In this document: in pieces, positions 2,274-5,007 of the stretch | Numbering within the stretch: the stretch's first letter is position 1 | Layout of the letters: every line of letters begins with the position of its first letter | Sequence record: MW825358.1 | Strand: one strand, 5' to 3' | Length of the DNA stretch: 64,000 nt | Notes under the pieces: generated by a model | What the model was told of the DNA's origin: nothing | Database searches by the model: none | The model's input: the letters and a program-made list of their open reading frames with translations, nothing else | Position numbers and translations under genes: made by a program

Positions 2274-2324
2274 CAATGCCTAATGATTTGGTAGTATTTT
2301 CTACCGGGGTTGAGCCCGAGCTGT

Positions 2325-2330
2325 CTATGA
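2325..2330 (+). promoter_or_regulatory. Candidate late promoter (cTATGa) for the major capsid gene
   Basis: phiKZ late promoters carry TATG overlapping the start site; TATGA recurs upstream of several structural genes in this window. Confidence 0.4.
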
Positions 2331-2501
2331 ATACTTACTTGAGTACGTATTTACGCACTTGCGCACTCCCCTCATTAGAGAGTGGTGGTCTAACGACTGC
2401 TCGCCCCGGTGGGCGGCAAGCCTAGGACCCCATCATTAGTTTAGCGGTGGGGAATAGGCTACTACTGCTGCCCTTACAAAACACACTCAAGGAACAAAGA
2501 A

Positions 2502-4769
2502 ATGGCTCTTCGTCTGAAAGCTGCCAAGTCGGCCCCGCTGTCCCAGCTGGCTGCCAACCTGCGCACCACCATCCTGGCCTCGGGTTCTGACCTGATTTCG
2601 GCCGGCACCACCAAGAACCTGCTGGCCTCGATGGAATCCATCGGTCAGATGGAAGCTGCAAACCTGCAGAACGAGTTTGAGGCTGTTCGCGATAACCTGC
2701 GTTCGCAGATCCAGGGCATCAAGGGTCTGTCCCGTTCGTTCGGTCTGGAGTCGGAAGGCTCGGCTGAAGAGCGCGAAGAGGCCCAGGCCCGCTTCGAGAC
2801 CGCGCTGGACGCTGGCGCGATGGCTGCCATGGCTGCCGGTAATCCGGAAGCCTACGCGCAGGCCGCTTACCTGGGTCAGGCCCAGGCCGCCCCGGGCGTG
2901 ACCATCGTCGACACGATGGCCTCCGACAGCGCCGCTGCCATGGACTACCGTCCGGCCGTGGCCATGGAAGCCTTCAACGACAAGGAACTGCGCGATCACC
3001 TGCCGTTCTCGATCCTGTTCAACATCTTCGCTTCGCGTCAGGACGACTTCTCCGAGATGTTCTTCCCGACGACCGTTGTCGCCCCGGACCAGGCTGGTCT
3101 GGACGTCACCGTTGCTCGCATGCAGGTCTTCAATGAAGTCCGTCACGCCGCTTCGGGTGCCAAGGTTGATTTCGGCAAGCGCAACCTGATCGACGCCGCT
3201 GTCGACTACACCATCCTGGCCGACGAGCACACCCGTCTGATCCCGGTCGTGCAGCCGGACGGTTCGAGCGACGACAAGTTCGTTGCCGACACCATCGTTG
3301 CCCCCTTCATGGAGAAGGTTGGTAAGTACGAAGTCCCGACCAGCGCTCTGGCCCTGGACAAGGACATCGACCTGATCGGTATTTCGCAGTACCAGCCGCT
3401 GCTGGGCGCTGGCGTGATCGATCACTCCGACGATGTGGACGCTCGCGTCTCCCTCGACAAGCTGTACCTCCAGGCCGGTTCCGGCGTGGCCGTGGCGTTC
3501 AACGTCAACCGTCTGGCCCGTAGCCAGTTCAACAAGACCGTGGAAGGCAACAGCCGTCTGCTGGGTCTGCAGTTCACCTCGACCGATCTGGTCATCGACA
3601 AGGACAGCAAGGCGATCGACGGCTCGGCCGTGACCGCGTTCGCTGGTATCGTCTCGGGCAAGTACACCGTGCGTCTGTCGGTGAACGTCTCGGGTGAGCT
3701 GAACGTTGAGTTCGGTAACGTCAAGGTGTGGGCTGCCTCGGTTTCCGTGGCTTCCATCCAGGACGAGAACGGCAACAGCGTTCCGACCTCCGGTGGCGCT
3801 GGCGCCGCTGTGGTCACCGCTCTGGCCGGTCTGAAGATCGTCGGTTACACCCTGCGTGCCAACCGCACCAACGCCAACCGTCGTACCCGTGGCCACCTGC
3901 TGGACACCGTGTATGAAACCCAGCGTTACACCATCCCGCTCGGCTCGCCGCTGTCGATCACCTCGCCGGTCACCGGTGACGGTTCGCGCGACGCTGCTGA
4001 CCAGAAGGCCCTGATCGCTGCCGCTCGTATGCGCAACAGCAACAACGCGGTCACCGCGCTGTTCGCCATTGCCGACCAGCTGCGTGAAGCGACCCGTGGT
4101 CCGAAGCTGCCGGCGGGTGAAGTGTCCGGTGTGGGCGGCCTGGGCCGCTTCCTGGTCGATCCGTTCTTCGAAGAGCACGATCTGGATCTGGTCGAGAGCA
4201 TCAACTCGATCAAGTCGCAGGACCGCGCCTACGACATCTCGGCCGTGCTGGTTTCGGCGATCCGTGATATCGCCTACCGCATGTACCAGAGCACCAAGAT
4301 CCAGCCTGCGATCGATGCGCTGACCGGCGTTGCCGGCGAAGCCCCGGTCCTGCTGGTGGGTACCGACCAGGTCCTGATCCGTCACCTGCTGGTGAACGGT
4401 GACAGCCGTACCTTCGGCACCGTGTTCGACAAGGCCATCGTCAAGGCTTCCGTTGACCGTCGCGTCTACAACAAGATCTTCATCTCGTTGAGCCGTGCTG
4501 GTGCGGAAGGTCCGGACCCGCTGACCTTCGGTACCCATGGTTGGATGTCCGAGCTGATCGCGACCATGCCGATCAGCCGCAACGGCCAGACCTCGAAGGA
4601 AGCGACTGTCCAGCCGCGTACCCTGCACATCAACAACATGCCGGTCCTGGCGATCATCAACGTCAAGGGTCTGTCGAAGGTTCTGGTCGATAAGACCGCG
4701 ACCCCGGCTCTGACCAGCGCTGGTGTGGCCAACGTGTACCTGGACGGCCTGAAGTACCCGACCCCGTAA
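2502..4769 (+). CDS. Major capsid protein with N-terminal propeptide, phiKZ gp120-like
   Basis: 755 aa, extreme codon bias typical of a highly expressed gene, RBS aaggaa; AMEAFNDKEL cleavage-type site, SRQDDFSEMFFPTTVVAPD, RRTRG and QPRTLHINNMPVL motifs as remembered for phiKZ-family capsid proteins; synteny with helicase and RNAP subunit. Confidence 0.92.
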   Translation: MALRLKAAKSAPLSQLAANLRTTILASGSDLISAGTTKNLLASMESIGQMEAANLQNEFEAVRDNLRSQIQGIKGLSRSFGLESEGSAEEREEAQARFETALDAGAMAAMAAGNPEAYAQAAYLGQAQAAPGVTIVDTMASDSAAAMDYRPAVAMEAFNDKELRDHLPFSILFNIFASRQDDFSEMFFPTTVVAPDQAGLDVTVARMQVFNEVRHAASGAKVDFGKRNLIDAAVDYTILADEHTRLIPVVQPDGSSDDKFVADTIVAPFMEKVGKYEVPTSALALDKDIDLIGISQYQPLLGAGVIDHSDDVDARVSLDKLYLQAGSGVAVAFNVNRLARSQFNKTVEGNSRLLGLQFTSTDLVIDKDSKAIDGSAVTAFAGIVSGKYTVRLSVNVSGELNVEFGNVKVWAASVSVASIQDENGNSVPTSGGAGAAVVTALAGLKIVGYTLRANRTNANRRTRGHLLDTVYETQRYTIPLGSPLSITSPVTGDGSRDAADQKALIAAARMRNSNNAVTALFAIADQLREATRGPKLPAGEVSGVGGLGRFLVDPFFEEHDLDLVESINSIKSQDRAYDISAVLVSAIRDIAYRMYQSTKIQPAIDALTGVAGEAPVLLVGTDQVLIRHLLVNGDSRTFGTVFDKAIVKASVDRRVYNKIFISLSRAGAEGPDPLTFGTHGWMSELIATMPISRNGQTSKEATVQPRTLHINNMPVLAIINVKGLSKVLVDKTATPALTSAGVANVYLDGLKYPTP

Positions 4770-4825
4770 TTGGGGCAGGTGCTTAGCGCAAAGCGTTAAA
4801 ACAGTAGTAGCCTACTGTTCAGAAG

Positions 4826-4856
4826 CTGCCCCGCCTTCGGGCGGGGCAGTGGTTTT
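4826..4856 (+). terminator. Intrinsic terminator after the capsid gene
   Basis: Perfect 10-bp stem ctgccccgcc/ggcggggcag with a cUUCGg loop, followed by tggtttt. Confidence 0.75.
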
Positions 4857-4860
4857 GCGT

Positions 4861-4910
4861 GGCATAACAGATTAGGCCAGACCGCTTTCGGGCGGTCTGG
4901 CTTTTATGCC
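4861..4910 (+). terminator. Second hairpin terminator, flanked by GGCATAA/TTATGCC
   Basis: Stem gccagaccgct/ggcggtctggc (4876-4901), UUCG loop, then tttt. Confidence 0.75.
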
Positions 4911-5007
4911 GCCTAGTCGGTTCAAAGATAAATCAAACGCATACCATCTAAGAGTACACCCGTCAACGGATGTGCTTTCCTTACCACCCAGAGAACCAGT
5001 AATTTCA

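What the first reader, a model, noticed from the sequence alone, without database searches (positions are those of the whole stretch)
2455..4814. Nested long-range helix that could join the 5' and 3' UTRs of the major capsid mRNA
Seen: the 5' UTR has taggctactactg (2455-2467), ctgccc (2468-2473) and ttac (2474-2477). The 3' UTR has their complements in exactly nested order: gtaa (4766-4769, includes the stop), gggcag (4773-4778) and cagtagtagccta (4802-4814, a perfect 13-bp match). Between the last two sits a small hairpin, ttagcgc-aaa-gcgttaa (4783-4799), which would make a three-way junction. The 3' 13-mer can alternatively fold locally (acagtag-tagc-ctactgt, 4801-4818). Inference: the roughly 2.3-kb capsid ORF is looped out by a closing helix about 25 nt upstream of the start codon and just before two terminators. 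This could be a processing stem (as in RNase III-cut rRNA precursors), a stabilising end-to-end clamp, a translation-reinitiation loop or a full-length-mRNA switch. I know of no description of this in phiKZ-like phages.
Basis: partly seen in the sequence, partly recalled or inferred. Interest (0 to 1): 0.75.

Follow-up and report, generated by a model that had tools for sequence, protein, structure and literature searches.

The report
Capsid mRNA end-to-end pairing element
The capsid gene of a giant Xanthomonas phage is bracketed by two short complementary sequences, one in each untranslated end of its mRNA; both have stayed almost unchanged across a whole clade of related phages, so the message probably folds end-to-end, which is rarely documented for bacterial mRNAs and which I did not find reported for a phage capsid mRNA.

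Summary
TAGGCTACTACTG (2455-2467) and its exact reverse complement (4802-4814) flank the major capsid ORF of Xanthomonas jumbo phage LucasX. They are the only two copies in the genome. Among about 50 genes in the window, this gene is the only outlier (13 nt against a next-best of 9).

I collected 18 capsid-gene lineages, down to 48% protein identity. Sixteen keep 9-13 bp of complementarity at fixed positions (about -47 from the ATG and 22-45 nt after the stop). The 3' core is 95% conserved while its flanks are 39% conserved. Both sites lie inside the predicted late transcript, between the TATG promoter and the terminators.

The helix core never varies, so covariation gives no support (137 of 500 shuffles reach the observed score). 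A competing local 3' hairpin has modest covariation support. Folding predicts the closed form in RTH11, L006 and L033, and places it 3.5 kcal/mol above the local form in LucasX.

Twelve other phiKZ-like phages, including a phiKZ-species phage (KTN4), show only chance-level complementarity.

Best reading (about 0.5): a clade-specific 5'UTR-3'UTR cyclization switch, closest to the 14-bp interaction in B. subtilis hbs mRNA. Its function is untested.

The parts
2326..2329 (+). Putative late promoter TATG, with the transcription start at G2329
   Evidence: The phiKZ nvRNAP late promoter is 5'-TATG-3' with the start at G (PMC4666361). This is the only TATG in the 260 nt upstream of the ATG, and it is at the equivalent place in relatives (-176 to -186). 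Inferred, not mapped.
2329..2501 (+). Predicted 173-nt 5' leader of the capsid mRNA
   Evidence: Runs from the TATG start to the ATG at 2502. It is conserved and structured in the LucasX-tier relatives (alignment A4).
2411..2424 (+). Upstream arms of the leader's own stems: P1 GGGCGGCA (2411-2418) and P2 AGCCTA (2419-2424). These compete with the long-range helix.
   Evidence: The RNAalifold consensus of 11 leaders pairs them with 2466-2473 and 2455-2460. These pairs have probability 0.97-0.99 in the LucasX co-fold.
2455..2467 (+). 5' element TAGGCTACTACTG. Positions 3-13 are invariant or nearly so (16-17 of 17 lineages).
   Evidence: It lies at -44 to -54 from the ATG in all lineages.
They are conserved, but a local leader stem (P1) accounts for that.
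   Evidence: The matching 3' partner is present in only about 5 of 17 lineages.
2502..4769 (+). Major capsid protein ORF (755 aa, LUCX_285)
   Evidence: phrog_3231 major head protein, E 1.2e-179. Pfam PF25620 PhiKZ_MCP on homologues.
4783..4799 (+). Small 3'-UTR hairpin (ttagcgc-aaa-gcgttaa)
   Evidence: Similar small GC hairpins sit at this place in several relatives (L033, L026) but were not analysed further.
4801..4818 (+). 3' element. Local hairpin ACAGTAG-TAGC-CTACTGT, of which 4802-4814 is the exact complement of 2455-2467.
   Evidence: Core columns 3'-14' are 95% conserved against 39% for the flanks. The local stem has 89% of cells paired and double changes at pair 2'-15'.
4825..4856 (+). 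First intrinsic terminator (11-bp GC stem plus T run)
4876..4905 (+). Second intrinsic terminator
   Evidence: Read from the sequence. Annotated as a terminator (ARNold) in the GenBank record.
4905..4908 (+). TATG of the next late promoter (TTTATGC block), which marks the end of the capsid transcription unit
   Evidence: TTTATGC[CT]G follows the terminator in LucasX, RTH11, L004, L006 and Xoo-sp14. The same block is seen after the terminator in most other lineages.

Best explanation
The two motifs are the arms of an RNA-RNA interaction between the 5' leader and the 3' UTR of the late capsid mRNA, that is, a cyclization element.

Each arm also has a weaker local fold. The 5' arm sits in a leader stem-loop. 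In the deeper relatives it sits in the apical loop of what would be a 5'-terminal hairpin. The 3' arm forms the hairpin CAGUAG-UAGC-CUACUG about 10 nt before the terminator. The leader's CUACUG has the same sequence as the hairpin's own 3' arm, and the leader continues into the complement of the hairpin loop. It can therefore displace the local stem and form 9-13 contiguous pairs (-20.9 kcal/mol for 13 bp, against -7.8 for the hairpin).

Only a transcript that has reached its 3' UTR can close. Closure is plausible here because these phages transcribe inside a ribosome-free phage nucleus, so the message is complete before it is translated.

The most likely role (inferred) is to protect or mark the full-length capsid message, as in B. 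subtilis hbs mRNA. A possible additional role is to keep the stop and start codons close together: each lies about 32-34 nt from the helix in LucasX.

Shown here: the sequence facts, the conservation, the positions and the thermodynamic feasibility. Inferred: the transcript ends, pairing in vivo, and the function.
For: (1) The 13-nt complement is exact and unique to the two flanks of this gene in the genome. The gene is the only outlier among about 49 genes in the window.
(2) I examined 18 lineages spanning about 1 substitution per capsid amino-acid site (tree). Sixteen keep 9-13 bp of complementarity. The 5' core is invariant or nearly so in 17 of 17, and the 3' core is 95% conserved while its immediate flanks are 39% conserved.
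(3) The conserved letters include those that are unpaired in the local folds: the hairpin loop UAGC, and the leader internal or apical loop ACUAC / GGCUACUA. These are exactly the letters complementary to the other element.
(4) Positions are fixed: -44 to -54 from the ATG, and 22-45 nt after the stop, always upstream of the terminator.
(5) Decay is correlated. The 3' core is lost or changed only in L004 and L031. Both are among the three lineages (L004, L031, L032) whose 5' core is also changed (hypergeometric p = 0.02). L004's loss is secondary, because it is nested within motif-bearing relatives.
(6) In L032 a 3-nt deletion in the 5' arm still leaves 11 bp (9 Watson-Crick plus 2 G.U), read by eye from the sequences. 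L022 and L028 have C-G where the others have U-A at the terminal pair.
(7) The helix is in the global MFE of the full 2.5-kb mRNA in RTH11, L006 and L033, with probability 0.97-1.0 in co-folds. In LucasX it lies 3.5 kcal/mol above the MFE.
(8) Both arms lie between the conserved TATG late promoter and the terminators.
(9) LucasX is grouped with the chimalliviruses, whose nucleus decouples transcription from translation (10.1101/2024.03.21.585822).
(10) There is precedent: a 14-bp 5'/3'-UTR interaction in hbs mRNA (PMC5737220).
Against: There is no covariation in the helix core, because it never varies. The covariation score is not above the shuffles (137 of 500). The evidence is conservation of complementarity, not compensatory change.

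The two C-G terminal pairs are weak evidence. That pair is unpaired in 6 of 17 lineages, and in L022 the 5' change also improves a local leader stem.

In LucasX, L025, L009 and L019 the thermodynamic model prefers the local alternatives. The competing local 3' hairpin has better covariation support (9-13 of 500).

The transcript ends are inferred, and no RNA run could be listed.

Because the 3' element is palindromic, the 5' motif also resembles its 3' half in direct orientation. A common binding factor could therefore explain part of the conservation.

One lineage (the L004 type, seen in at least four assemblies) does without the 3' arm, so the element is dispensable. No substitute pairing was detected in that lineage (p = 0.18).
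Confidence: 0.5

Rival explanations
1. There are two independent local RNA elements. One is a leader stem-loop (a 5' stabiliser or translation element). The other is a 3'-UTR hairpin (a stability or termination-associated element, or a protein-binding site). Their complementarity is a by-product of common origin from a palindromic sequence, or both are bound by one sequence-specific factor that recognises UAG(G/C)CUACUG. They never pair with each other.
For: The local 3' hairpin has covariation: pair 2'-15' shows AU, GC, CG and GU, and C14', which lies outside the long-range helix, is invariant. The leader has its own consensus fold that uses part of the 13-mer. L031 keeps the hairpin stem while changing its loop. 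Local folds win the MFE in LucasX and L025. In direct orientation the 5' motif resembles the 3' half of the hairpin (read from the sequences).
Against: This does not explain why the hairpin loop UAGC and the leader's unpaired ACUAC are invariant and mutually complementary, nor why the complement is contiguous over 13 nt. It also does not explain the correlated loss of the two sites (p = 0.02). The leader copy lacks the hairpin's 5' arm, so it is not a second copy of the same hairpin. The motif is not a dispersed repeat.
Confidence: 0.2
2. The same pairing occurs in trans. A stable 3'-UTR-derived fragment (seed hairpin plus terminator, the usual architecture of 3'-derived sRNAs) or a leader-derived fragment pairs with other capsid mRNA molecules as feedback regulation.
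For: Sequence alone cannot distinguish cis from trans pairing. The 3' UTR has the seed-plus-terminator layout. 5'-UTR-derived sRNAs, and terminators within capsid leaders, are reported in 201phi2-1 and phiKZ (PMC11512511). In L006's genome a third exact copy of the 3'-type motif lies 3 nt after the stop of another gene, in the same sense.
Against: There is no promoter-like TATG or processing signal in front of the 3' element. That third copy is seen in one genome only and could be chance (about 0.15 copies expected per genome). No RNA data are available.
Confidence: 0.1
3. This is a DNA-level inverted repeat. Two copies of a binding site for a phage DNA-binding protein bracket the capsid gene, for example to loop or insulate the most heavily transcribed late unit.
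For: An inverted repeat presents the same site twice to a double-stranded-DNA binder. The core is invariant, as protein-binding sites often are.
Against: The conserved blocks differ at the two ends. The 5' block extends 3'-ward into CTGCCCTT, and the 3' block extends into CTG. Each extension is explained by a local RNA stem. G.U-compatible changes are tolerated: U.G at pair 12-2' in 3 lineages, and 2 wobbles in L032. No other copy exists in the genome, and no candidate binding protein is known. Both sites fall inside the transcript rather than at promoter positions.
Confidence: 0.08
4. This is an RNase III processing stem. The paired flanks are cut to release a mature capsid mRNA, as with rRNA precursors.
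For: It has flanking-stem geometry. The icaR 5'/3' duplex is an RNase III substrate (PMC3868564). In L019 an alternative register gives an 18-bp helix with one bulge.
Against: The conserved helix is at most 13 bp with sharply unpaired flanks (0 of 17 lineages). The inner helices that would lengthen it are absent from most lineages. Canonical RNase III substrates are about two helical turns (my knowledge).
Confidence: 0.07
5. This is chance complementarity or a neutrally retained ancestral duplication.
Against: The cores are invariant on both sides in 15-17 lineages across saturating divergence, while the adjacent UTR columns are near random.
Confidence: 0.02

Closest known systems
B. subtilis hbs mRNA 5'/3'-UTR interaction (Braun, Durand and Condon 2017, PMC5737220)
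   Same: A contiguous long-range duplex of nearly the same size (14 bp there, 13 bp here). It joins a structured leader and the 3' UTR of one very abundant mRNA. It lies upstream of the SD rather than on it. In hbs it modulates endonuclease access to the leader.
   Different: hbs is a cellular Gram-positive gene, and the nucleases involved are RNase Y and RNase J1. Its ORF is short. Its interaction was shown experimentally. Here the loop is 2.3 kb, the host is a Gram-negative bacterium, the message is viral, and nothing has been tested.
S. aureus icaR mRNA 3'UTR-SD pairing (Ruiz de los Mozos et al. 2013, PMC3868564)
   Same: The 3' UTR of an mRNA pairs with its own 5' UTR. The 3'-UTR motif is conserved.
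   Different: The icaR pairing covers the Shine-Dalgarno sequence, blocks initiation and creates an RNase III site. Here the SD region (AAGGAA, about -14 to -9) is left free in all predicted folds, and the gene needs maximal rather than repressed expression.
hok mRNA fold-back inhibition (fbi) element of the hok/sok system (my knowledge)
   Same: The 5' end pairs with the 3' end only in the full-length transcript. A switch occurs between closed and local folds.
   Different: In hok the closed form is translationally inert, and 3' trimming triggers refolding. There is no evidence for either feature here. There is no sequence relationship.
Flavivirus 5'-3' cyclization sequences (my knowledge)
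   Same: Invariant complementary blocks of about 10-11 nt lie near the two ends of a viral RNA. They compete with local stem-loops and are conserved across a clade without covariation.
   Different: Those act on an RNA genome to promote replication. This is an mRNA of a dsDNA phage.
Long-range flanking stems of rRNA precursors, and T7 RNase III sites
   Same: Sequences that flank a functional RNA unit are complementary.
   Different: Those helices are at least 20 bp and are cleaved. This one is sharply limited to 13 bp or fewer.

Membership tests
Intramolecular 5'UTR-3'UTR interaction elements of bacterial mRNAs (hbs / icaR type) | Both arms lie on one transcript | tested here: inconclusive
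   Both lie between the conserved TATG late-promoter motif (2326-2329) and the first terminator (4825-4856). No RNA run could be listed, so the ends are inferred.
Intramolecular 5'UTR-3'UTR interaction elements of bacterial mRNAs (hbs / icaR type) | Contiguous complementarity well beyond chance | tested here: met
   13 Watson-Crick pairs, never reached in 300 or in 1000 shuffles. The gene is the only outlier among about 49 genes. The duplex is -20.9 kcal/mol.
Intramolecular 5'UTR-3'UTR interaction elements of bacterial mRNAs (hbs / icaR type) | Both arms are conserved together in relatives | tested here: met
   16 of 18 lineages keep 9-13 bp. The 3' core is 95% conserved against 39% for the flanks. 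Decay of the two arms is correlated, p = 0.02.
Intramolecular 5'UTR-3'UTR interaction elements of bacterial mRNAs (hbs / icaR type) | Compensatory covariation, or mutational proof of pairing | tested here: inconclusive
   The core is invariant, so the test has no power. The covariation score is reached by 137 of 500 shuffles. Only the terminal pair shows UA to CG, in 2 lineages.
icaR-type translational repression | The duplex covers the Shine-Dalgarno sequence | tested here: not met
   The 5' arm ends at -35. The SD and the CA-rich spacer are unpaired in both the local and the closed predicted folds.
RNase III processing stems that flank an RNA unit | A helix of about two turns (at least 20 bp), continuous or coaxially stacked | tested here: not met
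   The helix is at most 13 bp. The flanking positions 0-14' and 14-0' pair in 0 of 17 lineages. The inner helix is present in only about 5 of 17.
Dispersed palindromic or REP-like repeats, or a shared promoter or terminator motif | Many copies across the genome | tested here: not met
   Exactly two copies of the exact 11-mer in LucasX and in RTH11, and three in L006's genome. One-mismatch hits are no more frequent than a reversed-pattern control.
Rfam-described RNA families | A match to a curated covariance model | tested here: not met
   Only two sub-threshold hits, both on the terminator hairpin and neither on the two motifs.
General feature of phiKZ-like (chimallivirus) capsid genes | 5'/3' flank complementarity in other genera | tested here: not met
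   Twelve diverse phages give runs of 6-8 nt, p = 0.10-0.95. The Xoo-sp14 group and L017 are also at chance level.

The most novel reading that the evidence does not exclude
The element is a full-length licence specific to nucleus-forming phages. Because the capsid mRNA is finished inside a ribosome-free phage nucleus, end-to-end closure through the two motifs marks complete transcripts. That mark would serve for export, for protection in the cytoplasm, or for efficient ribosome recycling from stop to start. It would be a prokaryotic-virus analogue of the eukaryotic closed-loop mRNA.
Probability: 0.1. Interest if true: 0.85.

Novelty: new variant of a known kind. Interest (0 to 1): 0.55.

Why it matters
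Experimentally supported 5'UTR-3'UTR pairing within one bacterial mRNA is known from only a handful of cases, such as hbs, icaR and hok. My literature searches found none for a phage late mRNA.

Here comparative data delimit a compact element of two sites, each 13 nt or shorter, on the most abundant late message of a clade of nucleus-forming jumbo phages. In these phages transcription and translation are physically separated, which is the setting where long-range mRNA folding is most likely to matter.

The element is small enough to test directly with arm and compensatory mutations. It also offers a handle on how capsid expression is tuned in phages being developed for biocontrol of Xanthomonas. 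If it turns out to be only two independent hairpins, the work still maps the promoter, leader and terminator architecture of this capsid transcription unit.

Tried and rejected
1. Unrestricted RNAduplex of whole UTRs zips everything together and does not discriminate. The window-restricted duplex energy is dominated by GC-rich terminators: RTH11's genuine helix scores only p = 0.2. I used run-length statistics instead.
2. The partition function on the full 2.5-kb mRNAs timed out. I replaced it with MFE-only folds and mini-mRNA co-folds.
3. Dispersed regulatory motif or promoter: rejected, because there are only two copies per genome.
4. General property of phiKZ-like phages: rejected.
5. A possible analogous pairing in Xoo-sp14 (GGCCGCCCCTC with a terminator arm) and in L017 (CCGTCAG/CTGACGG): neither is significant, and the Xoo-sp14 one is not kept in its close relatives L011 and L015.
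6. A substitute pairing near the SD in the lineage that lost the 3' arm (L004): not significant (p = 0.18).
7. RNA-seq evidence: no RNA run could be listed, only DNA runs.
8. Rfam: nothing on the motifs.
9. Earlier notes of this scan: nothing relevant to this feature.
10. A concatenated 5'+3' alignment could not be given to the count of structure pairs by reference, so I re-implemented the same measures for the long-range helix in Python.
Full report
WHAT THE WINDOW IS. The window is part of Xanthomonas phage vB_XciM_LucasX (MW825358.1, 305,651 bp), matched at 100% identity. The ORF 2502-4769 is the phiKZ-type major head protein (phrog_3231, E 1e-179), annotated as LUCX_285. [quoted passage not shown]

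THE OBSERVATION. The 13-mer at 2455-2467 and its exact reverse complement at 4802-4814 are the only copies in the window, even with 2 mismatches allowed. The 11-nt core has exactly these two copies in the whole genome, and the same holds for the relative RTH11. A 13-nt Watson-Crick run between leader and 3' flank was never reached in 300 or in 1000 dinucleotide shuffles. Among about 49 crude genes in the window this gene is the single outlier, at 13 nt against a next-best of 9 and a mode of 6-7. For one genome that is about p = 1e-3, which is suggestive but not compelling.

TRANSCRIPT CONTEXT (INFERRED). The phiKZ non-virion RNA polymerase uses late promoters defined by 5'-TATG-3', with the start at G (PMC4666361). 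The only TATG in the 260 nt upstream of the capsid ATG is at 2326-2329, and relatives have one at the equivalent place. After the capsid ORF come two intrinsic terminators. Then comes a TTTATGC block, which most relatives also have after their terminator and which is presumably the next late promoter. Both motifs therefore lie inside the predicted mRNA, 2329 to about 4856. No RNA sequencing run could be listed.

COMPARATIVE EVIDENCE. I collected capsid loci from several sources:
- GenBank phages (RTH11, Xoo-sp14);
- IMG/VR and metagenome contigs;
- twelve assemblies reached through the protein collection.

This gave 18 distinct lineages from 81% down to 48% capsid identity, plus outgroups. The capsid tree shows a well-supported LucasX-tier clade of 11 lineages and a set of deeper lineages. 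Path lengths between the tiers are about one substitution per amino-acid site, so neutral intergenic DNA should be saturated.

Fifteen lineages carry both motifs with the cores GGCTACTAC and GTAGTAGCC intact. The complementarity is 13 bp in five lineages, 11-12 bp in nine, and 9 bp in L009. In L032 a 3-nt deletion in the repetitive 5' arm still leaves 11 bp, counting two G.U pairs (read from the sequences).

Positions are fixed. The 5' arm lies 44-54 nt before the ATG. The 3' arm lies 22-45 nt after the stop and always precedes the terminator. The 3' core columns are 95% conserved, whereas the ten columns on either side are 39% conserved, which is essentially random.

The complementarity is sharply bounded. 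The positions just outside the 13-mer pair in 0 of 17 lineages.

Decay of the two arms is correlated. The 3' core is lost (L004 type) or altered (L031) only in lineages whose 5' core is also altered. The hypergeometric probability is 3/153 = 0.02. The L004 loss is secondary, because that lineage is nested among motif-bearing ones.

WHAT THE COMPARATIVE DATA DO NOT SHOW. Because the helix core never varies, there is no compensatory covariation. Using the same measures as the pair-count tool, the long-range helix has 90.5% of cells paired, but its covariation score is reached by 137 of 500 shuffles. The only double change is at the terminal pair, U-A to C-G in L022 and L028. That pair is unpaired in 6 of 17 lineages, and in L022 the 5' change also improves a local leader stem.

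A partner for ctgccc beside the stop codon exists in about five lineages: LucasX, L009, L019, L027 and L030. The variation among them is G.U-compatible. The partner is missing in RTH11, L006, L022, L023 and L026. The invariance of CTGCTGCCC in the leader is explained instead by a local stem with upstream GGCAGC.

COMPETING LOCAL FOLDS. The 3' arm is also a hairpin, CAGTAG-TAGC-CTACTG. The pair-count tool gives it 89% of cells paired and two pairs with changes on both sides. Pair 2'-15' shows AU, GC, CG and GU. Between 9 and 13 of 500 shuffles reach the observed covariation measures. C14' lies outside the long-range helix and is invariant, which fits this hairpin.

The 5' arm lies in a leader stem-loop. 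In the LucasX tier, GGCU pairs with an upstream AGCY and GCUGCC pairs with GGCAGC, leaving ACUAC in an internal loop. In the deeper tier a conserved TATG sits at -61 to -64. A transcript starting there would begin with the stem GGCGGUGG/CUGCUGCC and display GGCUACUA in its apical loop.

So in each element the letters that are unpaired locally are invariant, and they are complementary to the other element. These letters are the hairpin loop UAGC and the leader loop. I take this as the strongest argument that the two elements interact.

THERMODYNAMICS. The isolated 13-bp duplex is -20.9 kcal/mol and the local 3' hairpin is -7.8. In co-folds of leader and 3' end, the long-range helix has probability 0.97-1.0 in RTH11 and L006, but about 0.01 or less in LucasX, L009 and L019. 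In MFE folds of the full 2.5-kb mRNAs it forms in RTH11, L006 and L033, but not in LucasX or L025. Forcing it in LucasX costs 3.5 kcal/mol, which is within the error of such models. The picture is a bistable pair of states, not a static clamp.

GENERALITY. Twelve other phiKZ-like phages show longest runs of 6-8 nt (p = 0.10-0.95). They are FLC9, pEa_SNUABM_54, DT01, Goslar, Eowyn, pVa-21, D6, SA002, RP12, Psa21, PhiPA3 and the phiKZ-species phage KTN4. The Xoo-sp14 group and L017 are also at chance level. The element is specific to the LucasX/RTH11 clade and its deeper metagenomic relatives.

INTERPRETATION. I favour, at about 0.5, an RNA-RNA interaction between the leader and the 3' UTR of the capsid mRNA that toggles with the local hairpins. 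Only a transcript that has reached its 3' UTR can close, and the ribosome-free phage nucleus gives it time to do so.

The nearest documented system is the 14-bp 5'/3'-UTR interaction of B. subtilis hbs mRNA, which modulates endonuclease access to the leader (PMC5737220). The icaR case (PMC3868564) differs because its duplex covers the SD. Here the SD is free in every predicted fold. Protection or marking of the full-length message is therefore my preferred function. Stop-to-start proximity is a secondary possibility, since each codon lies about 32-34 nt from the helix. Both are inference.

RIVALS.
- Two independent local elements, or one common binding factor (0.2).
- The same pairing in trans by a UTR-derived fragment (0.1).
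- A DNA-level inverted repeat (0.08).
- An RNase III stem (0.07), weakened by the 13-bp limit.
- Chance (0.02).

VERDICT. Nothing on 5'-3' pairing of jumbo-phage capsid mRNAs turned up in the literature searches. I rate it a new variant of a known kind, with interest 0.55.

Noticed in passing
L034:485-495 (-), which is IMGVR_UViG_3300011559_000001 positions 204184-204194: L006's genome holds a third exact copy of GTAGTAGCCTA. It lies 3 nt after the TAA stop of a 160-aa ORF on the other strand. That places it again in a 3' UTR and in the sense that is complementary to the capsid leader. It could be chance (about 0.15 copies expected per genome). If real, it would favour trans pairing.
   Followed up: partly
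window 2275-2294: The block AATGCCTAATGATTTGGTAG, about 35 nt upstream of the putative TATG start, is nearly identical in LucasX, RTH11, L004 and L006 although it is intergenic. It may be a further promoter or regulatory element of the capsid unit. phiKZ and 201phi2-1 are reported to have three capsid promoters (PMC11512511).
   Followed up: no
window 4902-4911, and the equivalent places in most relatives: TTTATGC[CT]G directly after the terminator T run is conserved in LucasX, RTH11, L004, L006 and Xoo-sp14, and a similar block follows the terminator in most other lineages. It contains TATG, so a terminator and the next late promoter appear to be fused. The mechanical ORF start at 4906 lies inside this TATG, whereas the GenBank start of LUCX_286 corresponds to window 5008.
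   Followed up: partly
L026, L028, L019, L029, L027, L030 and L031, at -61 to -64 from the capsid ATG: The deeper relatives share (A)TAGTATGGCGGTGG, with the TATG G at a fixed distance from the ATG. The LucasX tier has the homologous GCGGTGGGG without TATG. This suggests a proximal late promoter that was lost or replaced by the distal one in the LucasX tier.
   Followed up: partly
L035 (Burkholderia phage FLC9), about -40 from the capsid ATG and +77 after the stop: AGCCCCAAUAGC can pair with GCUGUUGGGGCU: 12 bp with one G.U, window-restricted duplex p = 0.01, one hit among ten phages tested. It may be similarity to a terminator arm, or an independent example of 5'/3' pairing.
   Followed up: no
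window 4762-4776: CCCC just before the stop codon can pair with GGGG just after it (CCCCG-UAAUU-GGGG), forming a small hairpin that encloses the stop codon.
   Followed up: no
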